Shown here in pieces: positions 26,242 through 54,604 of a stretch of DNA of 64,000 nt. Positions within the stretch are counted from its first letter, which is position 1, and each line of letters starts with the position of its first letter. The position numbers were made by a program, and so were the translations under genes. The DNA is taken from positions 1-64,000 of the IMG/VR virus record IMGVR_UViG_3300045256_000050, one strand, 5' to 3'. A model generated the notes under the pieces. That model searched no databases and was not told the origin of the DNA. It was given only the letters and a program-made list of their open reading frames with translations.

Positions 26242-28188
26242 TTATTTCTTGTGTTTGCAGCCCGGCAGGTGGCCCTGCAAGAACAGGTTCGGGCACTTGC
26301 ACTCGTCCGTGGCGTCGGCGATCTGCTCGATGGCGGCGATGCCACGAGTGTCGATGGTCACTTCGCCGAGGACTTCCACGTCCTTCCCCTTGTAGCCCTC
26401 GCAGTAGTCGATGATGACCGTCGGCGACTTGCTGCGGTCCGCCCGGCCGACCATCTGTGCGATATCGGCCTGGGTCGGTTCGACGTGCTTGCCGTCGATG
26501 ATGTTCAACCCCTTCTCCAGCGGAATCTTCGTCTTCAGGGCTTCGGCCGGGACCACCTTCGTCGGGCTGTTCGCCGGGTAGTGTTCCGGCATGACGATGG
26601 GCTGCACGCCGGGCGGCAGGTTCGTCAGTTCGCCGAACTTGACATCGTGCCACTTCACGACCGGCTCGGCCAGGATGTCGTACATCGACCCGGCGGCTTC
26701 CGGCTTGTTCTTCAGGAACTCGTCGAAGACCGGGAAGCCGGTGTGCGACTTCCTCTCGATGACGCCATCATCCTTGCCCTTCCAGGTCATGAGTCGGGTG
26801 ATGTCGCCCATGACGACTCGGGCGTGGCCCGGCCCGTCGGTGAACTCCACGAGGATGTCGCCGCCCAGGAATTCCTTTGTGATCTTACCCTTCCGGTCCT
26901 TGTACTCCATGCCGTCGGCGAAGTACGTTACTTCGTCGTTCAGCTTCGGCATGTTCGGCCGGTTGGTGATCGCCAGCTTGAAGGCGTCAAACCCGCACGG
27001 TTCTTCGTGAGCGGCTTGGTTGTCGAGCATCACGAACACCCAATCGTCCTTCTTCTTGCCGACGCTGACGACGGTGCCCTCCTGCCCCTTGCTCGACCCG
27101 TGCCGCAGGATCACCCGGTCGTATCGCTGGAACTCCGTCGCTACAGGGAGTTTCGTAACTTGACATTCGTGACAAGTTACGGACTTCATCATGTAGTTGC
27201 AGAGGTTGATGGCGAACCGCTTCGGGCCGAAGGCGGGCCACGTCTTGCCGTCGTCGATGGCGGCGATCTGGCCGTGTTCGCCCTTGTGTTCGCCGTTGAG
27301 GATTTCGACGTAATCCCCGACGGCGTAGAGGTTACGTTCCCTGATCTCCCCGCCTCGCAGCTTCTCCATGTACTCCAGGCTGGCGGGAAGCGGCTCCTGC
27401 ATCAGCTTGACGGTTCGCATGTACTCCTTCTTCATCACCGGATGGATGCCTTCACTGACGCCGTGCATGACCCGGAACTGCTGGCTTTCCGGGGACGGCT
27501 TGACGCAGGTGACGGTCTTGGCTTCCGGGATGTCCAGAAGGTCGGCCATGTCGGCACACGCCTTCTGCATCGCCTCCTTGCGTGCCTCCGTGGCCTTCTT
27601 CATATAGATGCTGTCGCCTTCGTGGAAGACGAAGTATTCCTGCGGTTCCAGGGGGTTCGGCTTGGTGAAGAGATTGCAGATGGTCAGCCACGCCTCTTCG
27701 ATGCGGAACGGCCATGCGTCCTTGCCGCTGTGAATGGAGAGGGCGGTGAACTGCCGCTTGTACGCCTCGATCTTCTTCTCTTGCTTCTTGCAGATCGCCT
27801 TGCGGATGGCGTCACATTGTTCTTCGAGGAAGCCGACTTCGACGAGCATCTGGTTGGCTTCGGCGACTTCCTTCGTCCGCTCCATCACCTTGTCCATGAC
27901 GCCGAGGCGGTGCCGCAGGGTTTCCCGGCCTGCGATGGGCGGGAGGAAGCGGATGGTCTGCCCCTTCAGGTTGTTGATGTCGAACATCTTCTTGTCAACG
28001 ACCTTGCCGTCTTCACCAATGACAGTGGGTTCGGCGACGGCATCGGCAGCCTCGACGGCTTCGCCGTAGGCCCGCTTGATGTCGGACATGGGGATGCTGG
28101 TTGTTTTCTTGGGGTCGTCGTTCATGTATGTCTCCCGGTGAGCGTTGAGCCAGAGGGCACGAGCCGCAGCGTATGAGTAGTGAGTCAT
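26242..28188 (-). CDS. Large multidomain protein with tandem KOW/SH3-like motifs
   Basis: 'VGDYVEILNGEHKGEHGQI', 'DRVILRHGSSKGQEGTVV' and a third similar unit; start moved to 28188 (ATGA overlap). Confidence 0.8.
   Translation of the reverse strand: MTHYSYAAARALWLNAHRETYMNDDPKKTTSIPMSDIKRAYGEAVEAADAVAEPTVIGEDGKVVDKKMFDINNLKGQTIRFLPPIAGRETLRHRLGVMDKVMERTKEVAEANQMLVEVGFLEEQCDAIRKAICKKQEKKIEAYKRQFTALSIHSGKDAWPFRIEEAWLTICNLFTKPNPLEPQEYFVFHEGDSIYMKKATEARKEAMQKACADMADLLDIPEAKTVTCVKPSPESQQFRVMHGVSEGIHPVMKKEYMRTVKLMQEPLPASLEYMEKLRGGEIRERNLYAVGDYVEILNGEHKGEHGQIAAIDDGKTWPAFGPKRFAINLCNYMMKSVTCHECQVTKLPVATEFQRYDRVILRHGSSKGQEGTVVSVGKKKDDWVFVMLDNQAAHEEPCGFDAFKLAITNRPNMPKLNDEVTYFADGMEYKDRKGKITKEFLGGDILVEFTDGPGHARVVMGDITRLMTWKGKDDGVIERKSHTGFPVFDEFLKNKPEAAGSMYDILAEPVVKWHDVKFGELTNLPPGVQPIVMPEHYPANSPTKVVPAEALKTKIPLEKGLNIIDGKHVEPTQADIAQMVGRADRSKSPTVIIDYCEGYKGKDVEVLGEVTIDTRGIAAIEQIADATDECKCPNLFLQGHLPGCKHKK
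27150..27166. repeat. Dispersed motif GTTTCGTAACTTGACA, copy 1
   Basis: Exact copies at 51823-51838 and, reverse-complemented, at 30845-30860. Confidence 0.85.
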
Positions 28189-28421
28189 GTGCGGTACTTG
28201 GCGTACTTCTTCTGGATGTAGGGGTCGTGCGGGAACTCTTCGAGCATCCTCAGCCCGGCCCGCCTGTCCAAGCGGTGTAACAGGAAGCAGGCCGGGGTGA
28301 GGAGTGCGACGACGGCGAGGAAGTAGAGGATCGGGAGGAAGCTGAGCTTGACGATGGACAACATCAGCACGAAGCCGATGACGAGCCAGCCGTTCAGGTT
28401 CGGTCCTTCCACGATCTTCAT
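28185..28421 (-). CDS. Small membrane protein
   Basis: Two hydrophobic segments. Confidence 0.7.
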   Translation of the reverse strand: MKIVEGPNLNGWLVIGFVLMLSIVKLSFLPILYFLAVVALLTPACFLLHRLDRRAGLRMLEEFPHDPYIQKKYAKYRT

Positions 28422-28424
28422 GAC

Positions 28425-28871
28425 TCACTCGCTTTCGTAGTTCACGGCTTCAACCTCGAACGGGGCTTGGTGGTAGCCGTAGTGCAGAACTTGTTCCAGG
28501 TAGAGGGCCAGGAACGTCATCATGTCGCCCACCCTTTCGACCTGAAGGACGTGCCCGAGTTCGTGGCGAATGAGCCGGGGCGTTTCGTGTCCTTCAGTAA
28601 TCAGGATGCCGTACCCGAGGGTAAGTCCGGCAGCCATCTCGATGTCGAGCAGGTCTTTACTCAGTAGCTCCAGCCCTTCCGGCGGTGGGGGCATCTGTGC
28701 TACAGTTAGCACACGAACGAGATCGGGGCGTAGGATTCCGATTTTGGACGCAAACGCAGTCTCGTCCGGGGTGAGTTCTCTGCCGTGGGCGAGGACGTTG
28801 GCTCGGTTGGCCTCGGCCCAGGGTATGACGGCAGGCAGAATCTCACTCAGCGGCAGCGGGTTCGACGGCAT
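28425..28871 (-). CDS. HExxH metallopeptidase-like protein (DUF4157-like)
   Basis: 'GLTLGYGI...LIRHELGHVLQ...PFEVEA'. Confidence 0.8.
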   Translation of the reverse strand: MPSNPLPLSEILPAVIPWAEANRANVLAHGRELTPDETAFASKIGILRPDLVRVLTVAQMPPPPEGLELLSKDLLDIEMAAGLTLGYGILITEGHETPRLIRHELGHVLQVERVGDMMTFLALYLEQVLHYGYHQAPFEVEAVNYESE

Positions 28872-29181
28872 CGGTCTTCTCCTCCACAGTGGCGTCCGGG
28901 GGAGCGGTTGTGGGCGTGGGGGTGGCGGCGGGCTTGTCCTCTTTGCCCGAGGACAATTCTACCAACCAACCGATCTTGTTGCCGCTGAACTTGGCCGGAA
29001 TGTTGGTCGGCAGGGTGGCGAGCTTGGTGATCTCGCTCCACGGGATGACCGGGAGCTTCCGCTTGCCCTTGTGGAAGGCGACACCGGCCTCGGACACGGT
29101 GACGCACACGTCACCCTTGCACCCGTTGATGTCTTCGACCGTCAGTTCCCGCACAACGGGCTTGGTGAGCTTGGTTGCCAT
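28843..29181 (-). CDS. Hypothetical protein
   Basis: GAGGAG RBS; first gene after the promoter. Confidence 0.8.
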   Translation of the reverse strand: MATKLTKPVVRELTVEDINGCKGDVCVTVSEAGVAFHKGKRKLPVIPWSEITKLATLPTNIPAKFSGNKIGWLVELSSGKEDKPAATPTPTTAPPDATVEEKTDAVEPAAAE

Positions 29182-29219
29182 TTCTCTCCTCGTGTGGTTA
29201 GTGCCGTCTAGGCAGGGTT

Positions 29220-29248
29220 AAGATACAGCCCACTCCCGCTGGTGTCAA
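29220..29248 (-). promoter_or_regulatory. Sigma70-type promoter
   Basis: Minus strand TTGACA-N17-TATCTT upstream of the leftward operon. Confidence 0.65.
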
Positions 29249-29343
29249 ATCAAACCGCCCGGTTCAGGGCTGACCTGAATGGGTTTTCGTCACAAACAAC
29301 ACCCGCTGAGGCTAGATATTAGGAGTTCGTATTGGAGAAACAA

Positions 29344-29766
29344 ATGCGGGATTTCAATGAGTTCCTTATCGAGAACGACCAGCGGGTGTTCAACGAGATT
29401 TTCGGCAAGATCGCCGGTGCCCTGGGGATGGGCGGGCCGGAGTGGGTCGGCTACCTGAAGAAGCTGTCGGCCACCCCGGAGGGTCCGGTCGCCCAGCAGA
29501 TGCTCAAGATGTTCACTAAAGGCGTGGACCCGAAGGATTACATGTGGGTCAAGCAGAATCAGAACGACGTGTTCCGCTTCCTCCAGAAGCACCGGAACAA
29601 CCTGGAAGGGATGGGTGTGAACGTAGACGGGTTGATTAAGAAGCTGGGAATCTACGACCCGACCGACTTGGCGATCAAGCAGTCCGGCAATGCTGGCTGG
29701 CTCGGCAACCGGAACGTTTCGGCTCACGACAACCACGCCACGGCGAACGTCAAGAGCCTTCGCTAA
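29344..29766 (+). CDS. Hypothetical protein with a capsid-targeting-like N-terminus
   Basis: GGAG RBS; MRDFNEFLIE start. Confidence 0.75.
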   Translation: MRDFNEFLIENDQRVFNEIFGKIAGALGMGGPEWVGYLKKLSATPEGPVAQQMLKMFTKGVDPKDYMWVKQNQNDVFRFLQKHRNNLEGMGVNVDGLIKKLGIYDPTDLAIKQSGNAGWLGNRNVSAHDNHATANVKSLR

Positions 29767-30101
29767 AACCCGTCTCTCTTCCAATTCACCTTTGGCCTAC
29801 AAGTCCTCTCCCAGAAGTACCAACACGTCCGGGCGAGGGCTTGTATGTTTTCCGGCAGTTCTTCGAGCAGGAAGCGGATGTGGTTGATGAGGGTGCAGGG
29901 CCACTCCTGGCAAATCTCCTCGTTCCGCAGGTAGCAGATCAGGACGCCGGGGGTGACGGGTTCGTATTCACCAAAGTCATTCGCCCAGATCGGGCTGTCG
30001 TGCTGGATGGGGTCTTCGACGCCGCCCCAGATCGACCGAACGAGTAGTTGTTCGGGGGTGGTCAGGTCGCAGGAAAAGTCGGGGTGGATCGCTGTGCGCA
30101 T
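29763..30101 (-). CDS. Hypothetical protein
   Basis: Convergent ORF with plausible composition. Confidence 0.65.
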   Translation of the reverse strand: MRTAIHPDFSCDLTTPEQLLVRSIWGGVEDPIQHDSPIWANDFGEYEPVTPGVLICYLRNEEICQEWPCTLINHIRFLLEELPENIQALARTCWYFWERTCRPKVNWKRDGF

Positions 30102-30528
30102 ACCAGGGGCCGTAAGGTGAAAGACAACAGATCATAGTAAAGACTAAATCTCTATCTGTTATAATAGAGAGCGCCCGGTAGGGCGCAGCCTCGACTATGA
30201 CCCATGCACTCAGTAAAGTGCGCATGGCGTCGTACTTCCACAGTCAAGTGGTTTTAAGTAGCTGTTGTGTTTGGGTTTCCAAACCTTCTCCGCTGCACGC
30301 TACCCCGATTGACTAGGCGTGCATTTACGGCATTAAGGGGTGCGGAGTCGGAATACCTCCACCCGGCGATTGGGTCTGAGTCGTCTGGTTACAACTACCC
30401 TGGTCCCCGAAGGGTCGCTAAGGTTTTTCTTCGCCCACCCCCTGGCGGCTACTCGGCCGGGGCTTCGGGCGCACAGTTCCCAGACATCTTAAACAACAAA
30501 TCGGCCCCGTCAACACTACTTTCAAAAT

Positions 30529-31008
30529 ATGCTGACCCAACTCACCGAAAACCACGTTGACGCCGTTCTGGGCATCTGCCAGCAGTGCTACCCCAACCCC
30601 GAGTATTGGGAGACTCGCACCAACGTCATGACTAAGCTGCACAACTACTCGCCGGGCTGCATCGGGTGGGAGGAGGACGGCAAGCTCGTCGCTTACTACC
30701 TGTTCTGGCCGTGGAACAAGGTCCGCTCCTACCCGCTCGACCGGGAGGACTGCTGGCTCAACAACCAGCAGCCGACGGTCATGTACAGCCACGACATCTG
30801 CATACTTCCATCATACCGTGGAAAAGGAATTGCGCAAGAGCTTTTGTCAAGTTACGAAACCCAGGCGAGGGAACTCGGCCTGCGGGTCGGCGTAGGTACT
30901 GCCGTGCGTGGGACTTGGGTGTTGTGGAAGAGATGGGGCTGGGAGCCGGTCGAGCGGGTGAACTACGGCCCGGAAGAGGCGTGGCTAATTTTGAAGTTTC
31001 TCTCTTGA
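30529..31008 (+). CDS. GNAT-family acetyltransferase
   Basis: Motif A 'ICILPSYRGKGIAQELL' and C-terminal 'WKRWGW'. Confidence 0.85.
   Translation: MLTQLTENHVDAVLGICQQCYPNPEYWETRTNVMTKLHNYSPGCIGWEEDGKLVAYYLFWPWNKVRSYPLDREDCWLNNQQPTVMYSHDICILPSYRGKGIAQELLSSYETQARELGLRVGVGTAVRGTWVLWKRWGWEPVERVNYGPEEAWLILKFLS
30845..30860. repeat. Dispersed motif TGTCAAGTTACGAAAC, copy 2
   Basis: Reverse complement of the 27150 and 51823 copies. Confidence 0.85.
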
Positions 31009-31076
31009 CTTCTTGTTACGCTTCTGGTTTATTACACAACTCAAGTTGAAAGTAACGAAACACAAGGAAGTGTAAC

Positions 31077-31811
31077 ATGGCAAAGCTGAACCAGATCATC
31101 GCCGTCGTCAACGGCAAGAAGACCAAGACCCAGAAGCAGGTCACGGACGTTTACCACAACCTCCAGAAGCCGACCTTGTTCGAGGGCATCTCCCGGACCT
31201 ACCGCCCGTCCGACGAGGACGGCGAGACGTTCCCGCCGGAAAAGAAGCTCGTTCAGTACAAGGTGCAGGACGCCGTTCGGGAAGTCCGTGAGGCTCTTAC
31301 GGAACTCTGGGACGTGACCGCAACCCAGGATTGGGCGAACTGCAAGGCCGTCGCCGACGTGAAGGTGGACGGGAAGGTTCTGTTGCTCAAGGTGCCGGTG
31401 ACTCACCTGCTGTTCCTTGAGAAGCAGTTGACCGACCTGCACACGTTCGTGTCCAAGCTGCCGACGCTCGACTCGGCCGAAAAGTGGAACTTCTCCCAGG
31501 AGGCCGACGCCTTCCAGTCCGAGGAGTCCCGCACGAACAAGACCAAGAAGGTCATGCGGAACCACGTCAAGGCTGCGGCCACGGACAAGCACCCGGCCCA
31601 GGTCGATGTCTATACTGAGGACGTGAAGGTGGGCGAGTGGGCCACGATCAAGTTCTCGGGTGCGATCCAGGTCAAGAAGAAGAACGAGATGCTGGAGCGG
31701 GTCGCCAAGCTCCAAGAGGCGGTCAAGTTCGCCCGTGAAGAGGCGAACAACCTTGAGGTCGAAAACCAGTCCGTCGCCGCCCCGGTGCTGGACTTCGTGT
31801 TCGGCAAGTAA
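31077..31811 (+). CDS. Conserved helical hypothetical protein (MAKLNQIIAV family)
   Basis: Strong resemblance to a bacterial conserved family (...ISRTYRP...LLFLEKQL...HPAQV...VKFAREEAN). Confidence 0.9.
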   Translation: MAKLNQIIAVVNGKKTKTQKQVTDVYHNLQKPTLFEGISRTYRPSDEDGETFPPEKKLVQYKVQDAVREVREALTELWDVTATQDWANCKAVADVKVDGKVLLLKVPVTHLLFLEKQLTDLHTFVSKLPTLDSAEKWNFSQEADAFQSEESRTNKTKKVMRNHVKAAATDKHPAQVDVYTEDVKVGEWATIKFSGAIQVKKKNEMLERVAKLQEAVKFAREEANNLEVENQSVAAPVLDFVFGK

Positions 31812-31837
31812 GGCCAGAACAAAATTTGTGACCCAAA

Positions 31838-31874
31838 AACACCCCAGCCGTTGACCCTTGTCCGGCTGGGGTGT
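31838..31874 (+). terminator. Hairpin, possible terminator
   Basis: ACACCCCAGCCG...CGGCTGGGGTGT. Confidence 0.5.
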
Positions 31875-31936
31875 ATCGTTATGAGAACACTCGATGACTA
31901 TCTCGCCCCCGCCATAACGCACTTTGGGTTCCGAAG

Positions 31937-33070
31937 ATGTGGGATGTTTTCACGGATGTCTCTGGGTTCGTTCCTCGCCGAGTCTGCGGTGCCTGGACGA
32001 ACGAGTTGATCGCACTGCATAACGTCTCTGACATTCTGATCGGGGTTTCATATCTCCTCATCCCCCTGTTCATCTGGAAATTCGTCCGGGCGAAACCGGG
32101 GATGAAGTTCTCCCTGATCTTCTACGCCTTCTGTGACTTCATCGTGTCGTGCGGCCTGACACACTTCATGGATGTGGCCCTCTTCTACTGGCCCAACTAC
32201 AGGCTGGCCGGGATCATCAAGCTGGTCTGCGGGGTTGTTTCCTTCAGTACAGTCATCCTGCTGTTCAGAATGTACCCACTCGCCGTCAAGATGATCCAGA
32301 CGCCGAGGGAGATACGGGAGAGGACCGAGACGCTATCCCAGAAGAACGACGCCCTGGAGAAGCAGAACGGGCATCTTGTCTTCGAACAAAAAGCGAAGGA
32401 CGACTTCCTGGCGATCCTCGGCCACGAACTCCGCAACCCACTCGCCGCCGTTTTCAACGCAAAACAACTTCTGGAACGGGACTCGGCCAAGAGCCGGGAA
32501 CTCGGGATGAAGATACTGGAGAACCAGATCGACCACCTGAACCGGCTGGTGGACGACATCATCAACGTCGCTCGTGCCGTCCAGGGTCGGCTGGAGTTGA
32601 GGCAGGACAAAACGTGTGCCCGTCAGATCATCGAGCGGGCGATGGAACTCGCCGCAGCCACCATCAAGAAGCACAAGTGCGTGGTGAGTGTCGAACAACC
32701 GCCGGAAGACCTGTGCTTTGTTGCCGATGAGATGCGCATGGCTCAGGTTGTGAGCAACCTGCTTACCAATGCTGCGAAGTATGGGCACGAAGGCGGCAAA
32801 ATCGAAGTTACTGTTACCTGCGAGGGTGGTATACTCCACCTATCAGTTCGAGATTACGGCATCGGCATCGGGCCGGAGAAGCTGGACACCATCTTCGGAC
32901 TCTGTGTCCGAACGGAACGTGCTGCCAAGAAGGCGGACGGTATGGGCGTCGGACTGGCGATGGTCCGGGCGATTGTCGAGCTTCATGGCGGTCATGTCAG
33001 TGCTAAGAGCAACGGCGTCGAGCAAGGGGCTGAGTTCCTGGTCACGATACCAATCACGGAGGTAGCATGA
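31937..33070 (+). CDS. Sensor histidine kinase with an ethylene-receptor-like 3-TM input domain
   Basis: H-box HELRNPL, N-box NLLTNAAKY, G1 DYGIGI, G2 GMGVGL; N-terminal SDILIGVSYLLIP...FIVSCGLTH resembles the ETR1 ligand-binding domain. Confidence 0.9.
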   Translation: MWDVFTDVSGFVPRRVCGAWTNELIALHNVSDILIGVSYLLIPLFIWKFVRAKPGMKFSLIFYAFCDFIVSCGLTHFMDVALFYWPNYRLAGIIKLVCGVVSFSTVILLFRMYPLAVKMIQTPREIRERTETLSQKNDALEKQNGHLVFEQKAKDDFLAILGHELRNPLAAVFNAKQLLERDSAKSRELGMKILENQIDHLNRLVDDIINVARAVQGRLELRQDKTCARQIIERAMELAAATIKKHKCVVSVEQPPEDLCFVADEMRMAQVVSNLLTNAAKYGHEGGKIEVTVTCEGGILHLSVRDYGIGIGPEKLDTIFGLCVRTERAAKKADGMGVGLAMVRAIVELHGGHVSAKSNGVEQGAEFLVTIPITEVA

Positions 33071-33408
33071 ACATCGTCCTTGTAGAAGACCACGACGACA
33101 TCGCCGACTCCAGCATGATGCTTCTCGATATGCTCGGGCATCAAGTCACGAGGGTGAAGACGGGCCTGGAAGCTGTGGAGTTGGCGAAGTCGGTGGTGCC
33201 TGACTGCTTCATCGTGGACATTGGCCTTCCCGACATCCCCGGCACCGAGGTTTGTAAGCGAATCCGCTGCCAGCCCGCTCATTACAAAACGCTGATGGTG
33301 GCGGTGAGCGGCTACGACATCAGCAACGAGGCGAAGGAGATCGGCTTCGATCAGGCGTTCAAGAAACCCGTCGATTACACCCGTCTCTTCCCGGCCGTCA
33401 CGAACTAA
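33067..33408 (+). CDS. Single-domain response regulator (CheY-like)
   Basis: VEDHDD, DIGLPD, SGY and KPV receiver motifs; ATGA overlap with the kinase. Confidence 0.92.
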   Translation: MNIVLVEDHDDIADSSMMLLDMLGHQVTRVKTGLEAVELAKSVVPDCFIVDIGLPDIPGTEVCKRIRCQPAHYKTLMVAVSGYDISNEAKEIGFDQAFKKPVDYTRLFPAVTN

Positions 33409-33412
33409 ACGA

Positions 33413-33447
33413 AAGAACCCCCGGTGATGCCGGGGGTTCTTCCTTTT
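33413..33447. terminator. Bidirectional terminator
   Basis: AAGAACCCCCGG-tgatg-CCGGGGGTTCTT between convergent genes. Confidence 0.75.
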
Positions 33448-33458
33448 GGGAACTCCGC

Positions 33459-34406
33459 TTACCGCCTGCTGCCCTGGTAGCGACGGCGGCGGGGTTGCTG
33501 CTCCTGCTCGTCGTCACCGCCTCGGCTGCGGTTGCTGGAGCGACGGCCGTTGTTGTCGTTCTCCTCGTCGTCCTCGTTGCGGCGGGAGCGGCGGTTGTCC
33601 TGCTCGTCGTCCTGCTGGCGGCGACGGCCCTGCTGCTGGCCGTTCTCGCTGCGGCCGTACCGCTGCTGCCACGTCTCCCGCCCGCCCCGGACGAAGTTCC
33701 CGTCGTCGTCCTTGCGGCGGCGGCTGTGGGCACCCGTCTCCGGGTCGGCCTCTTGTTCCTCTTGCTGCTGCTGCCGCCGCTGCTCGTACCGCTGTTCGTC
33801 GTCCGAGATCGTCTCGTCGATCTCGTTGCCGAACTTGCGAACCCTCCCCCGCCCGTCGTAGCCGTGCCGCATGTGGCGGGCGTCGGACAGGGCTTCCGTC
33901 TCGTTCTCCTTCAGGCGGCGGTCGTTCTCCTCGTCCCGGACCCGGCCCCGGCCGTCGTAGCCGTTGCGCATCTCACGGGCGTCCTTGATGGCCTGCGTCT
34001 CGTGGCCCTTGAGCCGGTGGTCCCACTGGTCATCTTCTTCCCGATCCTGGGAACGGGACTGCCCACGGTTGGAGGACGCCGCCCGACGCTGCTGTTGCCC
34101 TTCGTCCTGCTGGCGGCTGCGGGACTGGTTGCCGCCCTGGTTGCGGCTGGTGCCCCGCCGCTGGTGGTCCCGCTCCATCTCCTCCATCATCTCGTAGGTG
34201 TCCTCGAAGCACTCCTGCACTTCGGTGACGCCCTCGAAGTCCACGTCCGGGAAGTTGTCGAGGATGTCGAGGATTTCGTCCGGGGCACGGTTGTCCTGGG
34301 CGATCTCGAACAGGTCTTCCGTGCCACAGGGGTACTTGGCACCCCGGAGGTAGCGTTGGAGTTCGATGGGGGAGATGCCCGACTTGCCCTTGCTGCGAGT
34401 TGCCAT
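33459..34406 (-). CDS. DUF2795-domain protein with a hydrophilic repetitive tail
   Basis: 'SPIELQRYLRGAKYP...A.DN.A' DUF2795 pattern; duplicated 33-aa unit ending GYDGRGRVR. Confidence 0.8.
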   Translation of the reverse strand: MATRSKGKSGISPIELQRYLRGAKYPCGTEDLFEIAQDNRAPDEILDILDNFPDVDFEGVTEVQECFEDTYEMMEEMERDHQRRGTSRNQGGNQSRSRQQDEGQQQRRAASSNRGQSRSQDREEDDQWDHRLKGHETQAIKDAREMRNGYDGRGRVRDEENDRRLKENETEALSDARHMRHGYDGRGRVRKFGNEIDETISDDEQRYEQRRQQQQEEQEADPETGAHSRRRKDDDGNFVRGGRETWQQRYGRSENGQQQGRRRQQDDEQDNRRSRRNEDDEENDNNGRRSSNRSRGGDDEQEQQPRRRRYQGSRR

Positions 34407-34623
34407 GCCTTGCTCCTAGAGAGGTTTGCTGGGCGGGCGACGAGGAAAAGGTGTTGCAGCTACCGTGCCAGTACACCATTTGTTCCCGAGAAGTAAAATC
34501 CGCCTCTCCGTCAAAATGAGCAGCGAACTTCCCACTTTGGGGACGGGAATTTCTATTCCAAAACAAACCCCGTTTTGTTAATCTACACGTCGGTCCTCTT
34601 ACACCACAAAGGCAGGGACGCCA

Positions 34624-35121
34624 ATGAACCCGACGGACGTTGACTACTTGAAGATGGCCTACGAAGCGGCACGCCGCAGCCCCGACCCCTCCACCCAGAA
34701 CGGGGCCGTGATCCCCTACGAGGCGTGCGGCCAGATCAATGCCCTCAGTGCATGCAACGAGTTCCCGGAGAACGTGGAGTTGACTGAGGAAAGGCTGGTC
34801 CGCCCCCTGAAGTACAACTTCATCGAACACGCCGAGCGGAACGTGATCTACCTCGGAGCCAAGTACGGCATCGCCCTGGCCGGGAAGACGATGTACGTCC
34901 CGTGGTTCGCCTGCTCGGACTGTGCCCGTGGGATCATCTGTTCGGGAATCAAGCGGGTGTGCGGCCACAAGCGGATGCTCGACGCCACCCCGCCCCACTG
35001 GAAAGAGTCCATCGCCCACGCCATGACCATGCTGAAAGAGGCGGGCATCGAGATGGACTTGATCGAGGAGAAGCTGAACATCGAACCCATCAAGTTCAAC
35101 GGCGAACTGTGGGTGCCTTAA
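34624..35121 (+). CDS. dCMP deaminase
   Basis: SPDPSTQNGAV, HAERN and CSDC zinc motifs. Confidence 0.9.
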   Translation: MNPTDVDYLKMAYEAARRSPDPSTQNGAVIPYEACGQINALSACNEFPENVELTEERLVRPLKYNFIEHAERNVIYLGAKYGIALAGKTMYVPWFACSDCARGIICSGIKRVCGHKRMLDATPPHWKESIAHAMTMLKEAGIEMDLIEEKLNIEPIKFNGELWVP

Positions 35122-35220
35122 TAATCGGTTAATAACGCAGGAAAGAAATCTCGGCCGGGCCAGGGTAGCCCGGCCGTCTTTTTTCTACATACTGGTAGGC
35201 CACCAACCAGTGAGAGGAGT

Positions 35221-36048
35221 ATGCTTCGTGAAACCTTCAAAGCCAACCGCAAGTGGATTCTCTTCACCTACACGGTAATGCTCGCCGAGTTCGCCCTGTT
35301 CGCCATGATGCCCTGGCTGTTGGGGATGGCGGTGGACGGGCTGCTCGAAAAGAACCACAACAACTTCTACCTGTACGGCGGGTTGAGCGTGGTGGGCCTC
35401 GTGGTCGGCATCCTACGCCGCCAGATGGACACCCGAGTGTTCATGGGGATTTGGAAGAGGCAGGCCGTCGAAACGATTGACGGGATGCAGAAGCGGGAGG
35501 TAGAGGGGGCGAGAATTATTAGCCGCTACCGGCTGGTGGGCACATTCGCAGACTTCTTCGAGACGACCGTCCCGACTGCCGTTGGGGCGGTCGTTGACAT
35601 TGGTGTGGCCTTCTTCATGCTGTTCGCCGCCCTGGAGTGGGGCGGGCTGGTGCCCTTCCTGACGGCCCTGGTGGCGATGGTGGTGTACTATCTCGTAGCG
35701 AAGCGTATTCTGGTTATCGACCGGACCCTGCAAAAACTTAAGGAAAAAACCGATGAAAAAATCCTTGAATCCGGGGAGAGCGTGGAGCCGGAGTTCGATG
35801 GGATGCGGAAGGAGTGGGTCCGTCGGAGCGATATGGAGGCACTGTCCTGGGGGTTGAACGATCTCTTCTGGGTGGTCTGTGAAGTGTTCACGGTGTACTG
35901 GTTGCTGGACGGCGGGGAGAGCGTGGGCACGGTGATGGCGGCGATTGTGTATGTGGACCGCCTGTTCAGCCGGACGAGCATGCTGGCCGGGTACTTCAAC
36001 CACCAGCAGGAGATCAAGATGGTCAAGGAAGTGCTGGAAGAGGACTAA
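35221..36048 (+). CDS. ABC transporter six-TM membrane domain protein (no ATPase domain)
   Basis: 'PWLLGMAVDGLL...RRQMDTRVF' ABC_membrane_3-like pattern. Confidence 0.75.
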   Translation: MLRETFKANRKWILFTYTVMLAEFALFAMMPWLLGMAVDGLLEKNHNNFYLYGGLSVVGLVVGILRRQMDTRVFMGIWKRQAVETIDGMQKREVEGARIISRYRLVGTFADFFETTVPTAVGAVVDIGVAFFMLFAALEWGGLVPFLTALVAMVVYYLVAKRILVIDRTLQKLKEKTDEKILESGESVEPEFDGMRKEWVRRSDMEALSWGLNDLFWVVCEVFTVYWLLDGGESVGTVMAAIVYVDRLFSRTSMLAGYFNHQQEIKMVKEVLEED

Positions 36049-36057
36049 TATAACAGG

Positions 36058-37032
36058 ATGGAGCGGTTTGCGAACAATCTCAGAACTACCGTCAATCAGA
36101 TCGGCGGCATCAACAATAGCTCGAACCCGGTGACTTTCACCGTGGCCGATGCTACCGGGTTCCCGTCGTCCGGCAACTTCCGAATCATCATCGACAGCGA
36201 GATCATGCTGGTGACTTCCGTCTCCGGCAACAACTTCACCGCCACCCGTGCCCAGGAGGGGACGGTGATCGCCAAGCACGACCACACCGCCCCGGTCTAC
36301 CACCTGTTCACTGCGGGGGCGTTGACGGCGGCTTGCTCGGATACCGTCCAGAGCGGGCAGTACGCCCAACTCCCGGCCAGCCCCGAGCGGGGGCGACTGT
36401 ACGTCCCGAACAACGACCAGGACTGGCAGGTGGGTCAGGCGTCGGGGTGGATGCCGGTCGGGCCGATGATTAAGATGACGTACCCGGACAACAGCCTGTA
36501 CTCCTGGGTGAACCAGGGCAGTACGACGATCACGCAGAACGGGCACCACATCATCATGACCGGGGATAACCACACGTTCGGCACCCGGTACGCCCGGATG
36601 AAGACGGCCCTGACGCCGCCGTTCCGGTACACGCTGATCTTCACCGCCAACGTCGAGAACATCTTCACCCGGAACTCGGCCTGTGGGATTATCCAGCGGG
36701 AGTCCAGTACCGGGAAGTGTATTACCATCGAGCAGTCCTACGGGGTGAACTTCCTGCGGTTCGGCGTGTTGTATTTCAACACCGTCACGAGCTTTAACAG
36801 CATGCTCTACGGGTGGACGGATTACCCGCACCCGAAGTTCATGCGGTTCCTCCAGGTTCACGACGACGGGACGAACGTGAACTACAACCTGTCCTACGAC
36901 GGCATCTTCTACGAAACCATCTACAGCCGGGGGCGGACGACCCTGATTACGGCCGACCAGATCGGCTTTGAACTCGGGGAAACGGTGGACGGCCTGAACA
37001 AGATGATCGTCTGGAGTATCGAAGAGGGCTAA
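36058..37032 (+). CDS. Tail fibre/receptor-binding-like protein, paralog 1
   Basis: N-terminal 'FPSSGNFRIIIDSEIMLVTSVSGNNFTATRAQEGT' virion-attachment-like module. Confidence 0.75.
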   Translation: MERFANNLRTTVNQIGGINNSSNPVTFTVADATGFPSSGNFRIIIDSEIMLVTSVSGNNFTATRAQEGTVIAKHDHTAPVYHLFTAGALTAACSDTVQSGQYAQLPASPERGRLYVPNNDQDWQVGQASGWMPVGPMIKMTYPDNSLYSWVNQGSTTITQNGHHIIMTGDNHTFGTRYARMKTALTPPFRYTLIFTANVENIFTRNSACGIIQRESSTGKCITIEQSYGVNFLRFGVLYFNTVTSFNSMLYGWTDYPHPKFMRFLQVHDDGTNVNYNLSYDGIFYETIYSRGRTTLITADQIGFELGETVDGLNKMIVWSIEEG

Positions 37033-37997
37033 TGGAAAGATTCACTAATAATGCGTTCACGACCCTGGCCGGTGCCATCGACGAGAGTACGACCCCCGTC
37101 ACCTTCGCCGTCGCCAGTGCGTCCGCATTTCCCACGGCAGGCAACTTCCGCATTGTGGTTGATAGTGAAATCCTCCTGGTGACTTCCGTCTCGGGGAACA
37201 ACTTCACTGCGACGAGGGGTGCGGAAGGCAGCCCGATCCAGGCCCATGCGGTCGGGGCCGGGGTGCGGCACGTCTTCACTGCGGGGGTGTTGACACAAGT
37301 CCTCGCCGACAACATCACCACCGGGCCGTATGCGAGTCTGCCGTCCTCTGCGGGGCGAGCGGGCCGGATGTACGTTCCGACCGACGAATATGTGGTTATG
37401 GTGAGCGACGGGTCGAACTGGCTTCGGTACGGCCCCATCTATCCGGTGACACGGCCGAACTTCTCCGGGGCGACTCAGGTTAACTTCTCGGGCACGACGT
37501 ACAGCCAGACGGCGTTCGGTGCCCAGATTGTCCAGGTGGGCGGGGCTGGAGGTACGAGGCGTGGGGTGTTCAAGAGTACGATCACCGCCCCGTACAAGAT
37601 CACCATGATTTACAGTCAGACGGGTTCGCTGCCGGGGGATACCCGGACGGCGGGTTTGGCTATCCGGGATTCGGCGACCGGGAAGTTGGTCACGTTCGAG
37701 ATAGCGATGGCGTTCGGGGCTTGCGGCGTTCACCAGTGGAACTCGCCCACGTCGTTCAACAACTCACCGCTGGGCTGGGGTTCGATTGAGTACACGGCGG
37801 GGTGGATCAAGTTCCTCCAGATTCACGACGACGGGACGAACCACAGGTTCAACTTCTCGGCGGACGGTATTTATTGGGACACGCTTTACACCCAGAGCAA
37901 GACGGCGTGGCTGGCAACCCCCGACCAGTACGGGTTCATTGTGGGCGAGGGGTCGGCGACGACGAACGTCCTGAGCTTTAAGGAGGAGAGTGCGTAA
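37032..37997 (+). CDS. Tail fibre/receptor-binding-like protein, paralog 2
   Basis: Same N-terminal module and HDDG(T/A)N C-terminal motif. Confidence 0.75.
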   Translation: MERFTNNAFTTLAGAIDESTTPVTFAVASASAFPTAGNFRIVVDSEILLVTSVSGNNFTATRGAEGSPIQAHAVGAGVRHVFTAGVLTQVLADNITTGPYASLPSSAGRAGRMYVPTDEYVVMVSDGSNWLRYGPIYPVTRPNFSGATQVNFSGTTYSQTAFGAQIVQVGGAGGTRRGVFKSTITAPYKITMIYSQTGSLPGDTRTAGLAIRDSATGKLVTFEIAMAFGACGVHQWNSPTSFNNSPLGWGSIEYTAGWIKFLQIHDDGTNHRFNFSADGIYWDTLYTQSKTAWLATPDQYGFIVGEGSATTNVLSFKEESA

Positions 37998-38971
37998 TGG
38001 CCGTTGAAGTGTTTGGTAACAACGCAGTCTCGTACCTGACGGCTGCCCTGGATAGCTCGACCGACCCGGCACCGATCTCCGTTCACAACGGTTCGGTGTT
38101 CCCGAGGAGTGGGAACTTTCGCATCCAGATCGACAGTGAAATCCTCCTGGTGACATCCGTCTCCGGGAACACGTTCACCGCCAGCCGTGCCCAGGAGGGG
38201 ACGCAGATCGTCGCTCACGAGAACGGATCGACCGTCAAGCACATCTTCACGGCCGGAGGATTGAATAAGGCGTTGGACGAGTCCGTTGTCGTCAGCAGCT
38301 ACTCTGCCTTGCCGTCTGCCGGGAGGGCGGGACGGGTTGCCTTCACTAGCGACGACCGGGTGATGTTGTTCAGTGACGGGTCGAACTGGTTGCCTTATGG
38401 CCCGTTCACCCGGTTCTACCCGCCGGTGCTGTCGGACTTAACCTGGGTCAACCAGGGGGCGTCGAGAACGGCTACCCAGCTTGGCACGGTGTTCAACATA
38501 AACAGCACGTTGCCGAACGGCAGTTCGAACCGAGGGGGTTTGGTGAAGACGGCCCTCACGCCCCCGTTCAAGCTGACGATCTGCTACACCATTAACAAGC
38601 GGGTGATGGCCGAGAGCTTCTTTTCGGGCGGGATCATGGAGTACGAGTCGTCGTCCGGGAAGTTCATCACCTGGGAGCAGGGCACGTTCAACTTCATCAA
38701 CATCGGGGTTCACACCTGGAACAACGGCACTTCGTTCGCCGGGACGATCTACGGGTGGGCACCCTACGACGAGCCGACGTACCTGCGGTTCATGCAGATT
38801 CACGACGACGGGGCGAACGTGAACTACAACTTCAGCTACGACGGGATCGGCTGGTACACGCAGTACAGCCGTGCCCGGACGAGCTTCATCAACGCCGACA
38901 AGTACGGGGTGATGCTGTCCGAGGGGCAGGGGAGCGTCACCGTCTTCAGTTTCAAGGAAGAGTCGGCCTAA
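37997..38971 (+). CDS. Tail fibre/receptor-binding-like protein, paralog 3
   Basis: Same architecture; shares the SFKEESA end with paralog 2. Confidence 0.75.
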   Translation: MAVEVFGNNAVSYLTAALDSSTDPAPISVHNGSVFPRSGNFRIQIDSEILLVTSVSGNTFTASRAQEGTQIVAHENGSTVKHIFTAGGLNKALDESVVVSSYSALPSAGRAGRVAFTSDDRVMLFSDGSNWLPYGPFTRFYPPVLSDLTWVNQGASRTATQLGTVFNINSTLPNGSSNRGGLVKTALTPPFKLTICYTINKRVMAESFFSGGIMEYESSSGKFITWEQGTFNFINIGVHTWNNGTSFAGTIYGWAPYDEPTYLRFMQIHDDGANVNYNFSYDGIGWYTQYSRARTSFINADKYGVMLSEGQGSVTVFSFKEESA

Positions 38972-40043: not shown

Positions 40044-40102
40044 GTTCTCCTCCTCATGAAGAACGTTTTCTGTAGTTATTCTTATTTTCCTCCTTTCCGG
40101 TG

Positions 40103-40130
40103 TTGACATTCTGTAAGAAGCGGCTATACT
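40103..40130 (+). promoter_or_regulatory. Sigma70-type promoter driving the ncRNA locus
   Basis: TTGACA-N16-TATACT. Confidence 0.7.
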
Positions 40131-51679: not shown

Positions 51680-51774
51680 ACGAAGGCGTCCCCGTCTTAG
51701 GAAGGACGGGGACGGAGGGGAATTGAAGTAGGACGGGATAGCGGCCTCGGAGCGTGACCCTGAACGAGTCACCT

Positions 51775-52467: not shown

Positions 52468-52470
52468 GTT

Positions 52471-52725: not shown

Positions 52726-52760
52726 GCCGCCATTCTATTGCCGACTTTTCGGACGTAAAC

Positions 52761-54575: not shown

Positions 54576-54604
54576 TGGTGGCTCCCTGCCATGTTGGGTT
54601 CGGC

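What the first reader, a model, noticed from the sequence alone, without database searches (positions are those of the whole stretch)
31937..33408. Phage-encoded two-component system with an ethylene-receptor-type sensor
Seen: a complete histidine kinase translationally coupled to a stand-alone receiver. The input domain has SDILIGVSYLLIP and FIVSCGLTH. Known: the ETR1-family ethylene-binding domain has SDxxIAxAYxSIP and FIxLCGxTH, with Asp, Cys and His implicated in copper and ethylene binding; these residues are retained here. Two-component pairs are uncommon in phages. Inference: the phage may sense ethylene-like volatiles, alcohols or copper and feed into host signalling, since the receiver has no output domain.
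Basis: partly seen in the sequence, partly recalled or inferred. Interest (0 to 1): 0.68.

Follow-up and report, generated by a model that had tools for sequence, protein, structure and literature searches.

The report
Huge phage carries ethylene-receptor-type sensor pair
A very large bacteriophage from hot-spring microbial mats encodes its own intact two-gene signalling pair whose membrane sensor has the copper/ethylene-binding domain of plant and bacterial ethylene receptors, which suggests that a virus may read a gaseous cue during infection.

Summary
ORF 31937-33070 (377 aa) is an ETR1_N (Pfam 92.8 bits, full length) - HisKA - HATPase_c kinase. Its stop overlaps (ATGA) the start of a 113-aa stand-alone receiver at 33067-33408. 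Asp, Cys and His of the copper/ethylene site, the coupled Lys, four further near-invariant family positions and all kinase and receiver catalytic motifs are intact.

The contig is a real tailed phage. Large terminase, portal, baseplate and tape-measure genes lie on the same 245-kb record (CheckV 48% complete), and the nearest terminase belongs to a 595-kb uncultured phage. Contigs from two runs and a second IMG/VR record span both junctions without a difference, so misassembly is excluded.

The pair lies in a 2.8-kb accessory cassette that a ~90%-identical relative lacks. Homologous sensor-receiver pairs (39-50% identity) sit in at least eight other phage-like contigs, six of them beside AAA and ClpP genes. 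I found no report of this in the searched literature and no match in 50,697 GenBank phage records.

Ligand and output are inferred, not shown.

In passing: five relatives carry an in-frame TGA at the conserved N-terminal Cys, followed in most by a hairpin. These are candidate selenocysteine variants.

The parts
31810..34608 (.). Accessory cassette of about 2.8 kb holding the kinase, the receiver and a convergent DUF2795 gene. A ~90%-identical relative lacks it.
   Evidence: a contig from run X5 (bioreactor sludge) joins 31809 to 34609. It skips 2799 nt and has 104 other letters between, so in that relative DUF7873 lies next to the dCMP deaminase.
31839..31874 (+). 12-bp hairpin with a 12-nt loop, between the upstream DUF7873 gene (stop at 31811) and the kinase start. 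It may be a transcript boundary and lies just inside the cassette edge.
   Evidence: Read directly from the sequence. The terminator scan did not report it because it accepts only loops of 3-8 nt.
31851..31879 (+). Weak sigma-70-like promoter match (TTGACC, 17 nt, TATCGT; 9 of 12), 58 nt upstream of the kinase ATG.
   Evidence: This is a consensus match only: 3 sites were found against 0.9 expected in the region. It is not evidence of function.
31937..33070 (+). Sensor histidine kinase, 377 aa: ETR1_N ethylene-binding domain, helical linker, HisKA (DHp) and HATPase_c (CA).
   Evidence: The start is supported by homologous N-termini in relatives.
31985..31987 (+). Codon of Cys17 (PRRVCGAW), a predicted periplasmic residue ahead of the first transmembrane helix. 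It is Cys in 126 of 127 cellular family members and is replaced by in-frame TGA in five relatives.
   Evidence: PMC6682694 notes that the single N-terminal Cys of bacterial receptors may make the dimer disulfide.
32006..32290 (+). Ethylene-binding domain (residues 24-118): three transmembrane helices carrying D32, Y39, I42, P43, I69, C72, H76 and K95.
   Evidence: Pfam match. (column conservation). (AF2 helices 22-52, 59-84, 88-119; pLDDT 77-88). (hydropathy).
32393..32578 (+). DHp / HisKA domain (residues 153-214). The phospho-accepting H163 (HELRNP) is the codon at 32423-32425.
   Evidence: In the AF2 model the third transmembrane helix runs on, after a 3-residue break (120-122), into helix 123-179, which holds H163.
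32726..33058 (+). Catalytic ATP-binding domain (residues 264-374) with the N box (from N274), G1 box (from D306), F box (from F320) and G2 box (from G335).
33067..33408 (+). Stand-alone receiver (113 aa, CheY-like) with E7 and D8 in the acidic pocket, phospho-acceptor D51, S81 and K100-P101. It has no output domain.
   Evidence: GGAGG lies 6 nt before the ATG, and the ATGA overlaps the kinase stop.
33411..33443 (.). 14-bp GC-rich hairpin followed by TTTT on the + strand. It sits between the convergent stops of the receiver and the DUF2795 gene and is probably a bidirectional terminator closing the two-gene operon.
33459..34406 (-). Convergent gene inside the same cassette: a DUF2795 N-terminal domain with a long charged low-complexity tail (315 aa). 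No link to signalling is shown.

Best explanation
This is an intact, phage-encoded two-component phosphorelay carried as an accessory cassette by a huge tailed phage (at least 245 kb, probably about 500 kb) from hot-spring microbial mats.

The kinase probably inserts into the host inner membrane with its N-terminus outside and forms a dimer, perhaps linked through Cys17. Each three-helix domain is predicted to hold Cu(I) at C72 and H76, with D32.

The most likely mechanism follows the ETR1 model. Ethylene, or a chemically similar small unsaturated ligand, binds the copper. The D32-K95 bridge passes this change to the third helix. That helix continues almost without a break into the DHp helix bearing H163, so ligand binding shifts the balance between autokinase and phosphatase activity. 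In the characterised receptors, ethylene acts by switching the output off.

Phosphate then passes to D51 of the co-translated single-domain receiver. This receiver has no DNA-binding or enzymatic domain, so it must act through protein-protein contact, or as a phosphate shuttle or sink, on a host or phage target.

Shown here: domain identity, intact motifs, phage context, accessory status, and conservation in related phages.
Inferred: copper and ethylene binding, membrane topology, direction of regulation, and the target.

A speculative target is the phage's own AAA+/ClpP proteolysis module. In six related contigs it lies immediately upstream of the pair, and the Caulobacter receiver CpdR works as a ClpXP adaptor in that way (my own knowledge).

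In sunlit mats ethylene forms photochemically from dissolved organics. It could therefore serve as a cue for light or time of day, or for neighbouring cells, that helps time infection.
For: Family membership: ETR1_N 92.8 bits, full length; Atlas feature score 0.94 and structure TM 0.90.

Binding-site residues: D32, Y39, I42, P43, I69, C72, H76 and K95 are conserved in the window, and each is conserved in 124-127 of 127 cellular family members. Their spacing equals that of ETR1 D25/Y32/I35/P36/I62/C65/H69. The roles of Asp25, Cys65, His69 and Lys91 come from PMC10266040.

Intact signalling parts: kinase boxes and receiver residues invariant across six phage orthologues. The AF2 model shows three transmembrane helices, with the third continuing into the DHp helix.

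Operon signals: ATGA overlap, GGAGG, and a terminator.

Phage identity: large terminase, portal, baseplate wedge and tape measure on the same contig. The best terminase hit is a 595-kb uncultured phage.

No misassembly: contigs from two runs span both junctions with 0 differences and flat depth. A second IMG/VR record is identical over 8.4 kb.

Maintained by phages: homologous pairs occur in L002, L005, L017, L099, L114 and L116, all in the same gene order as one another. Three of them (L002, L005, L017) were compared or aligned with the window's 50.7-63.9 kb block. Pairs also occur in L003, and as a fused kinase-receiver in L018. Kinase identity of 49% matches that of the flanking phage genes, 35-60%.

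No sign of recent transfer: GC3 lies within the genome's range.

Bacterial precedent: SynEtr1 and AzoEtr1 bind ethylene (PMC6682694, PMC11819568). Photochemical ethylene in water is cited in PMC6682694.
Against: - No binding, phosphotransfer or expression data exist. No RNA run holds the locus.
- The kinase-receiver complex prediction gave no verdict.
- Only a few members of this very large bacterial family have been shown to bind ethylene.
- The phage-type domains differ from the family consensus on the predicted outer face: PRRxCG instead of PHGxC[LYF], loss of the second Tyr of AYYSIP, and W85.
- A near relative does without the cassette, so it is dispensable.
- The host is unknown, so copper loading and the target cannot be assessed.
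- In this window the pair is not next to the AAA/ClpP genes (about 19 kb away), which weakens the proposed target.
- I did not align the protein directly with an authentic AtETR1 sequence. The residue mapping rests on the Pfam match, the spacing and the family alignment.
Confidence: 0.6

Rival explanations
1. The pair is functional, but the copper-containing domain reports something other than ethylene. Candidates are periplasmic copper or redox state, oxygen or reactive species, or another small ligand of Cu(I) such as CO, other alkenes or isonitriles. The output path is the same.
For: - The conserved predicted periplasmic Cys17 is swapped for candidate selenocysteine in five relatives. Such Cys/Sec swaps usually mark redox or metal sites (my own knowledge).
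- The phage clade differs from the consensus around this Cys.
- The habitat is a hot-spring mat with strong daily redox swings.
- Most bacterial members of the family are uncharacterised.
Against: - All positions required for ethylene binding in ETR1, including the high-affinity Asp rather than Asn, are retained.
- Every family member tested so far binds ethylene.
- The N-terminal Cys is already explained as a dimer cross-link.
Confidence: 0.25
2. The cassette is a passenger picked up from a host. It is intact but does nothing useful for the phage, or it only benefits a lysogen.
For: - It is an indel relative to a ~90%-identical relative.
- It sits at a different place than in the related phages that share gene order.
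- The kinase start has a weak ribosome-binding site.
Against: - Homologous pairs are kept in at least eight other phage-like contigs at 39-50% identity, with every catalytic and ligand residue intact.
- Divergence is like that of neighbouring phage genes.
- Composition matches the phage.
- The closest cellular kinase core is only 34-45% identical.
Confidence: 0.08
3. The locus is cellular: a misassembled chimera, host DNA flanking a prophage, or a large plasmid wrongly called viral.
For: Two-component systems are typical of cells. IMG/VR calls the record linear and only 48% complete.
Against: - Phage hallmark genes are on the same contig.
- Tail-fibre-like paralogues lie about 2.6 kb downstream.
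- Both junctions are spanned by other assemblies with 0 differences and even depth.
- An independent IMG/VR record is identical.
- The same pair is embedded in the shared gene order of related phage contigs.
Confidence: 0.03

Closest known systems
SynEtr1 / UirS (slr1212) of Synechocystis sp. PCC 6803
   Same: It is a bacterial sensor kinase with an N-terminal three-helix ethylene-binding domain and a single N-terminal Cys, and ethylene binding has been shown. It controls cell-surface and pilus behaviour (PMC6682694).
   Different: It is cellular. A cyanobacteriochrome (GAF) light-sensing domain lies between the binding domain and the kinase, so it is a dual light and ethylene receptor. Its partner is a DNA-binding regulator (my own knowledge), not a bare receiver.
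AzoEtr1 of Azospirillum brasilense
   Same: It is a bacterial ethylene-binding-domain kinase that appears to be the receptor of a two-component system. Residues 1-130 bind 14C-ethylene, and the seven binding residues are conserved (PMC11819568).
   Different: It is cellular and plant-associated. Azospirillum homologues in my search are about 523 aa and include PAS domains. The window protein has no PAS domain and comes from a hot-spring phage.
Arabidopsis ETR1 / ERS1
   Same: It has the same domain family (PF25487) and the same Asp/Cys/His copper site and Lys bridge (PMC10266040). A histidine-kinase module follows the sensor.
   Different: The plant receptors have a GAF domain, two N-terminal Cys, sometimes a fused receiver, and signal through CTR1 rather than a phosphorelay to a free receiver. 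The window protein lacks GAF. Only the cytosolic parts of ETR1 and ERS1 have solved structures.
Cellular kinases with the ethylene-binding domain joined directly to HisKA, such as Methylocaldum sp. (P0013)
   Same: They have the same minimal architecture (ETR1_N, coiled coil, HisKA, HATPase_c) and align along the whole length at 35-37% identity.
   Different: They have a longer linker (440 aa) and the family-typical PHGxC motif, and they are chromosomal. The phage-type domains form their own clade together with two short metagenomic fragments, one of them binned as Planctomycetaceae.
Other phage-borne sensor kinases, such as the agr locus of Clostridioides phage phiCDHM1 and sasA of Microcystis phage MaAM05
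   Same: They are precedents for phages carrying histidine kinases (Hargreaves et al. 2014, cited in PMC6324907; MW495066.1 annotation).
   Different: Their input domains and ligands differ, and none has an ethylene-binding domain. A tblastn search of residues 1-135 against 50,697 GenBank phage records found nothing.
Single-domain response regulators (CheY, DivK, CpdR)
   Same: The receiver is about 113-120 aa, has a complete phospho-acceptor pocket and no output domain, and so must act through protein contacts.
   Different: No membership is shown. CpdR and DivK-like NCBIfam models score far below their cut-offs (31.7 against 180 bits; 35.5 against 160 bits). The best scores are to receiver domains of OmpR-type regulators.

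Membership tests
ETR1-type ethylene-binding domain (Pfam PF25487, ETR1_N) | Profile match above the curated cut-off along the whole domain | tested here: met
   92.8 bits against a 27-bit cut-off, profile positions 2-96 of 97. 96.1 bits in the six-frame search.
ETR1-type ethylene-binding domain (Pfam PF25487, ETR1_N) | Three transmembrane helices at the N-terminus | tested here: met
   AF2 helices at 22-52, 59-84 and 88-119 with block pLDDT 77-88. Hydropathy peaks are centred near residues 33-43, 65-69 and 98-108.
ETR1-type ethylene-binding domain (Pfam PF25487, ETR1_N) | Copper/ethylene-site residues (ETR1 Asp25, Cys65, His69), the other residues needed for binding (Tyr32, Ile35, Pro36, Ile62) and the coupled Lys91 | tested here: met
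   D32, Y39, I42, P43, I69, C72, H76 and K95 are present, and each column is conserved in 124-127 of 127 cellular members. The spacing equals the ETR1 numbering. The roles of D25, C65, H69 and K91 are from PMC10266040. The list of the other four is from my own recollection of Wang et al. 2006, a paper that is not held. No direct alignment with AtETR1 was made.
ETR1-type ethylene-binding domain (Pfam PF25487, ETR1_N) | N-terminal Cys ahead of the first helix (dimer disulfide) | tested here: met
   C17 is present. This position is Cys in 126 of 127 cellular members and in all nine phage-type members with a full call. The function is proposed in PMC6682694.
ETR1-type ethylene-binding domain (Pfam PF25487, ETR1_N) | Cu(I) cofactor and saturable ethylene binding | not testable with these tools
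   This needs protein expression with copper and a 14C-ethylene binding assay.
Plant-type ethylene receptor architecture (binding domain, GAF, kinase, with or without receiver) | GAF domain between the sensor and the kinase | tested here: not met
   No GAF hit. In the model the third helix leads into the DHp helix after a 3-residue break. The protein therefore belongs to the domain family but does not have the plant architecture.
HisKA-class sensor histidine kinase | H box with a phospho-accepting His, plus N, G1, F and G2 boxes | tested here: met
   H163 in HELRNP, the N box starting at N274, and G1 at 306, F at 320 and G2 at 335. HisKA scores 41 bits and HATPase_c 92.2 bits. Many solved kinases match residues 150-375.
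Response-regulator receiver, single-domain type | Acidic pocket, phospho-acceptor Asp, conserved Ser/Thr and Lys-Pro, and no further domain | tested here: met
   E7, D8, D51, S81 and K100-P101. All but S81 (Thr in the others) are invariant in six phage orthologues. The protein is 113 aa, with Response_reg covering profile positions 1-110 of 111. A terminator follows directly.
Cognate kinase-receiver pair | Co-transcribed neighbours that dock and pass phosphate | tested here: inconclusive
   Adjacency with ATGA overlap, and the same pairing in eight relatives, support co-function. The complex prediction gave no verdict. Phosphotransfer cannot be tested here.
Tailed bacteriophage (Caudoviricetes), huge-phage size class | Virion and packaging hallmark genes on the same molecule, and genome size over 200 kb | tested here: met
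   Tape measure at 65559-71084, baseplate wedge at 76127-77680, large terminase at 115235-117028 and portal at 118489-121065 of the record. The record is 244,986 bp and CheckV rates it 48% complete. The terminase is 47.5% identical to that of a 595-kb uncultured phage.
Bacterial selenoprotein (applies to relatives only, not to the window) | In-frame UGA at a position that is Cys in homologues, followed by a SECIS hairpin | tested here: inconclusive
   TGA lies exactly at the Cys17 column in L017, L018, L099, L114 and L115, and the upstream ATG-initiated N-terminus is homologous. A hairpin starts 15-17 nt downstream in four of the five minimum-energy folds and can also form in the fifth. Loops include GGUC. 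The folding z-scores are not significant, Rfam has no hit, and no tRNA-Sec was found in the loci held. The window has Cys (TGC).

The most novel reading that the evidence does not exclude
A lineage of huge phages carries its own gas receptor. This would be a copper-based ethylene sensor wired to a free receiver, which lets the virus read a diffusible cue of environment, time of day or community state and retune infection, possibly through the phage's own AAA+/ClpP machinery. Some lineage members would build the sensor with selenocysteine at the dimer or metal-proximal Cys. If so, this would be the first viral receptor for a gaseous hormone and, to my knowledge, the first phage-encoded selenoprotein.
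Probability: 0.25. Interest if true: 0.9.

Novelty: new member of a known kind. Interest (0 to 1): 0.7.

Why it matters
Ethylene receptors are known from plants, cyanobacteria and a few other bacteria. The literature I could search (PMC and bioRxiv) holds no report of one in a bacteriophage, and GenBank phage records have none.

If the phage sensor works like its relatives, a virus would be sensing a gas. That adds a new kind of input to phage decision-making, beyond DNA damage, arbitrium peptides and quorum-sensing signals.

The protein is also the most stripped-down form of the receptor: binding domain, one helix, kinase. It comes from a thermal habitat. Both points could make it a good subject for the still-missing experimental structure of the ethylene-binding domain, and a compact part for ethylene biosensors.

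The candidate selenocysteine variants point to the N-terminal Cys as functionally important. If confirmed, they would extend selenoproteins to phages.

Tried and rejected
- Complex prediction of kinase residues 135-377 with the receiver: no verdict (score 0.33 against a mark of 0.34; one control scored 0.51). It is not used either way.
- Word-index search restricted to residues 1-130 of the window protein: found only itself. I therefore searched with the more canonical Methylocaldum domain instead. That search returned no plant sequence, so no direct alignment with AtETR1 was made.
- Scan of 185,579 species genomes with the full-length alignment: the patterns were taken from the kinase core. 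Nearly all of the 80 loci kept match only residues ~100-375 at 34-45% identity. Three reach into the binding domain (L060 Planctomycetales, L036 Massilia, L079 Dormibacterota). This gives no close cellular donor and no host assignment.
- Relatives of a virus record cannot be drawn by the genome search.
- PDB by sequence: no solved ethylene-binding domain, only cytosolic ETR1 and ERS1 fragments.
- Rfam on the TGA-bearing loci: no SECIS family hit. Fold z-scores of the 42-54-nt stretches range from -1.9 to +0.2 and are not significant. A column-wise covariation count was not attempted, because L099 pairs one register off and there are only five sequences.
- tRNA-Sec: none in the loci held, nor in the 245-kb record, which has only tRNA-Glu and tRNA-Leu.
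- Wang et al. 2006 (PMC1785413) is not held.
- PHROGs on L003 and L018 neighbours gave no virion hallmark, only a Ro60-like RNA-binding protein and an amidoligase. Those two contigs are therefore called phage-like, not proven phage.
- The large all-against-all profile search was not run. The family scans left nothing open, and no claim here rests on an absence of relatives.
- Host: not resolved.
Full report
**1. What is at the coordinates**

The + strand holds an ORF at 31937-33070 (377 aa), followed directly by an ORF at 33067-33408 (113 aa). The second ATG overlaps the first stop (ATGA) and has GGAGG 6 nt upstream.

Pfam assigns the first protein three domains:
- ETR1_N (PF25487): 92.8 bits, E 1.7e-26, residues 24-118, profile positions 2-96 of 97.
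- HisKA: residues 153-214.
- HATPase_c: residues 264-374.

The second protein is a Response_reg domain from end to end with no other relevant match. NCBIfam gives only generic kinase-core and receiver similarities, all far below the equivalog cut-offs. A six-frame search of the whole record finds one ETR1_N, one HATPase_c and one receiver, all here.

**2. Are the functional residues there?**

I built a profile from twelve family members. I then aligned 136 full-length ethylene-binding domains returned by two word-index searches.

The window protein carries D32, Y39, I42, P43, I69, C72, H76 and K95. In the 127 cellular-type sequences these columns are D 127, Y 126, I 124, P 126, I 125, C 127, H 127 and K 127.

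The spacings match the ETR1 numbering:
- D to Y is +7, to I is +10, to P is +11.
- I to C is +3, and C to H is +4.
- D to I is +37.
- These equal D25/Y32/I35/P36/I62/C65/H69. K95 corresponds to K91, with a loop 3 residues shorter.

PMC10266040 documents several roles. Cys65 and His69 are the copper ligands. Asp25 is critical for copper binding and high-affinity ethylene binding, and Asn variants bind about 100-fold more weakly. Lys91 is the partner of Asp25 that passes the signal to helix III. That seven residues are required for binding is stated in PMC6682694 and PMC11819568. Which four make up the rest of the list is my recollection of Wang et al. 2006, which is not held. I had no authentic AtETR1 sequence from a tool, so the mapping is by profile, spacing and family alignment, not by direct pairwise alignment.

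The kinase boxes are intact: H163 in HELRNP, the N box starting at N274, G1 at 306, F at 320 and G2 at 335. The receiver has E7, D8, D51, S81 and K100-P101. All of these except S81 (Thr in the others) are invariant across six phage orthologues.

An AlphaFold2 model (mean pLDDT 73) shows three long helices at 22-52, 59-84 and 88-119. The third helix leads, after a 3-residue break, into helix 123-179, which bears H163. A second DHp helix and an alpha/beta ATP-binding domain follow. There is no GAF or PAS domain between sensor and kinase. The basic loop KFVRAKPGMK (residues 48-57) between helices 1 and 2 suggests the N-terminus lies outside the cell, as in ETR1 (inference from the positive-inside rule).

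**3. Is it really phage DNA?**

The window is the first 64 kb of a 244,986-bp IMG/VR record that CheckV rates 48% complete. PHROGs identifies four hallmark genes on the same molecule:
- tape-measure protein: record 65559-71084
- baseplate wedge: 76127-77680
- large terminase: 115235-117028 (E 1e-45)
- portal: 118489-121065 (E 1e-67)

The nearest terminase in GenBank phages is that of a 595-kb uncultured phage, LR756511.1, at 47.5% identity.

The window itself has typical huge-phage cargo:
- methionyl-tRNA synthetase, CCA-adding enzyme, ClpP, an AAA ATPase and a tRNA-Glu
- three tandem tail-fibre-like paralogues about 2.6 kb downstream of the receiver

Misassembly is excluded. A 4114-bp contig in runs X1 and X2 covers 31244-35357, and a 2362-bp contig in run X4 covers 31713-34074. 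Both have zero differences, and depth is flat at about 9-11 across the locus and its flanks. A second IMG/VR record (L101, 80 kb) is identical over 27937-36320.

GC3 of the kinase (0.735, 15th percentile) and of the receiver (0.798, 55th percentile) lies within the genome's range. The runs that hold the phage are labelled hot-spring and microbial-mat metagenomes.

**4. An accessory cassette**

In run X5 (bioreactor sludge) a contig about 90% identical to the flanks joins 31809 to 34609, with 104 other letters between. That relative therefore lacks the kinase, the receiver and the convergent DUF2795 gene, and DUF7873 abuts the dCMP deaminase there.

Within the cassette:
- a 12-bp hairpin (31839-31874) and a weak promoter-like site precede the kinase
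- a 14-bp GC-rich hairpin followed by TTTT (33411-33443) closes the operon between the convergent stops

**5. The pair is kept by a group of related huge phages**

The closest proteins (39-50% identity over the full length) come from large metagenomic contigs.

Six contigs share one gene order. They are L002 (148 kb), L005 (60 kb), L017 (137 kb), L099 (32 kb), L114 and L116 (51 kb). The order, as far as each locus extends, is:
- Clp_N
- His_Phos_1
- ClpP
- two unknown genes
- AAA
- a small ORF
- the kinase
- the receiver
- Peptidase_M14, on the opposite strand

For L002 and L005, BLASTP shows that this block corresponds to window 50.7-63.9 kb in inverted orientation. Identities are 35-60%, against 49% for the kinase and 43-47% for the receiver. 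The kinase has therefore diverged in step with the phage backbone.

In the window, the slot between the Peptidase_M14 and AAA genes is filled by another gene, and the pair lies about 19 kb away. The module has moved.

Architectures vary among the phage copies:
- binding domain + kinase: window, L002, L003, L005, L099
- binding domain + PAS + kinase: L017, L114, L116
- binding domain + kinase + fused receiver: L018

L003 and L018 sit in a different phage-like context with Ro60-like, aminoacyl-tRNA synthetase, ligase and sigma-factor genes. No virion hallmark lies in the stretch I hold.

A pattern scan of IMG/VR with a binding-domain-only alignment found 12 more viral contigs (29-350 kb). Ten distinct ORFs were scanned, and all pass the ETR1_N cut-off. 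They include an HWE-type kinase, a PAS-kinase and six stand-alone domains of 139-171 aa. I did not check whether those contigs are truly viral at that spot.

GenBank phage records contain no match to residues 1-135.

**6. Where the phage domains sit in the family**

In a FastTree phylogeny of 139 binding domains, all phage-type sequences fall in one clade of 14 tips (support 0.92). The clade also holds two short metagenomic fragments. One of these is P0043, 3 kb long and binned as Planctomycetaceae. The sister group is P0019 and P0031 (support 0.99).

The clade has its own signature. It reads PRRxCGxW where cellular members read PHGxC[LYF]xW. The second Tyr of AYYSIP is lost, and W85 and D/E79 are present.

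The genome scan gave no cellular kinase closer than 45% in the core. No recent donor and no host can be named.

**7. Most likely mechanism**

See Best explanation for the mechanism. The steps shown here are the parts list, their intactness, the operon structure, the phage context and the evolutionary retention.

The steps inferred from characterised relatives are:
- Cu(I) at C72, H76 and D32
- ethylene binding
- relay through D32-K95 to helix III and on to H163
- transfer to D51

Because the site has Asp rather than Asn, the sensor is predicted to be of the high-affinity, slow-release type (PMC10266040).

The output is the least certain step. A bare receiver must work through protein contacts. 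Three possibilities stand out:
- The conserved neighbourhood with a phage AAA/ClpP module in six relatives suggests a CpdR-like adaptor role. This is speculation, and the CpdR model scores far below its cut-off.
- A CheY-like action on host motility or pili would parallel SynEtr1, which controls cell-surface structures and phototaxis (PMC6682694).
- The receiver could act as a phosphate sink.

As for the cue, ethylene arises photochemically from dissolved organics in sunlit water (PMC6682694). That would make it a daylight proxy in a mat.

**8. Noticed on the way: candidate selenocysteine variants**

Six homologues were called by gene finders as starting inside the first helix. For five of them DNA was available, from L017, L018, L099, L114 and L115.

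In each of the five:
- the frame runs upstream through a single TGA to an ATG
- the N-terminus thus restored (for example M-D-F-x-x-x-L-F-D-T-E-G-F) is homologous to that of the Cys-type proteins
- the TGA aligns exactly with Cys17

In four of the five, the minimum-energy fold has a hairpin starting 15-17 nt after the TGA. In L115 the same hairpin can form but is not the minimum-energy structure. Loops include GGUC, which I recall from memory as the loop of the E. coli fdhF element.

The folding energies are not significant against shuffles. Rfam has no model that hits, and no tRNA-Sec lies in the stretches held. This therefore remains a candidate.

PMC6682694 notes that bacterial receptors have one N-terminal Cys, which may make the dimer disulfide. 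A Cys/Sec exchange at this site marks it as functionally important.

The window gene has TGC at this position.

**9. Verdict**

As a molecular device this is a new member of a known kind. Kinases with the ethylene-binding domain number in the thousands in bacteria (3802 hits in one length-limited search), and the minimal architecture also exists in cells (P0013).

What is new is the bearer. The pair is a conserved accessory module of huge phages, and it is unreported in the literature I could search. Function remains to be shown.

Noticed in passing
Relatives: L017 7932-7934, L018 7932-7934, L099 5932-5934, L114 4932-4934, L115 1890-1892. The window equivalent is the Cys17 codon at 31985-31987.: There is an in-frame TGA exactly at the conserved N-terminal Cys of the sensor domain in five homologues, four of them in phage-like contexts. 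A homologous ATG-initiated N-terminus lies upstream, and a hairpin starts 15-17 nt downstream in most. These are candidate selenocysteine-containing ethylene-receptor-type kinases. Gene callers truncated all of them.
   Followed up: partly
window 31809/34609: A ~90%-identical relative in a bioreactor-sludge run lacks the 2.8-kb segment with the kinase, receiver and DUF2795 gene (104 other letters in its place). The module is an indel between close relatives.
   Followed up: partly
window 50702-63924, compared with L002, L005, L017, L099, L114, L116: The related contigs share a conserved gene order: CCA-adding enzyme, HAD_SAK_1, Clp_N, His_Phos_1, ClpP, AAA, then kinase, receiver and Peptidase_M14. 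BLASTP of L002 and L005 shows the window has the same block inverted and without the pair. A weak RecA/KaiC-like ORF (51775-52467, minus strand) fills the slot instead.
   Followed up: partly
IMG/VR loci L102-L113: Twelve further IMG/VR contigs (29-350 kb, GC 0.37-0.71) encode ETR1_N proteins. They include six stand-alone domains of 139-171 aa, an HWE-type kinase (L103, in a 279-kb contig) and a PAS-kinase (L105-L107). I did not check whether these spots are viral or host flank.
   Followed up: partly
window 36058-38971: Three head-to-tail paralogous genes (324, 321 and 324 aa; 42-44% identical to one another) have weak PHROG matches to tail-fibre proteins. They may be alternative receptor-binding proteins.
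   Followed up: partly
window 35221-36048 and 39390-40109 (minus strand): An ABC_membrane_3 protein (275 aa, no ATPase domain seen) and a Peptidase_C39-like protein lie a few kb apart. Together they recall the parts of a bacteriocin-type export system, inside a phage.
   Followed up: no
window 46492-48141, 60106-61776 (minus strand), 54605-55216 (minus strand), 2818-2891: The phage carries a methionyl-tRNA synthetase, a CCA-adding enzyme with a long N-terminal extension, a ClpP protease and a tRNA-Glu. This is translation and proteolysis cargo typical of huge phages. Only two tRNAs are found in the whole 245-kb record.
   Followed up: partly
window 33459-34406 (minus strand): This protein has a DUF2795 N-terminal domain and a tail of about 250 residues made almost only of R, Q, E, D, G and N. 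It is co-inherited with the signalling pair in the cassette.
   Followed up: no
window 32393-32451: Depth spikes about fivefold in all runs, caused by short contigs of other organisms that match the H-box coding region (HELRNP). This is an artefact of conserved kinase DNA, not a feature of the phage.
   Followed up: yes
L003 14196-16856 and 11703-13289; L018 3135-4838: The second group of phage-like contigs with the pair also encodes a Ro60/TROVE-like RNA-binding protein and an 886-aa protein with a major-vault-protein shoulder domain.
   Followed up: no
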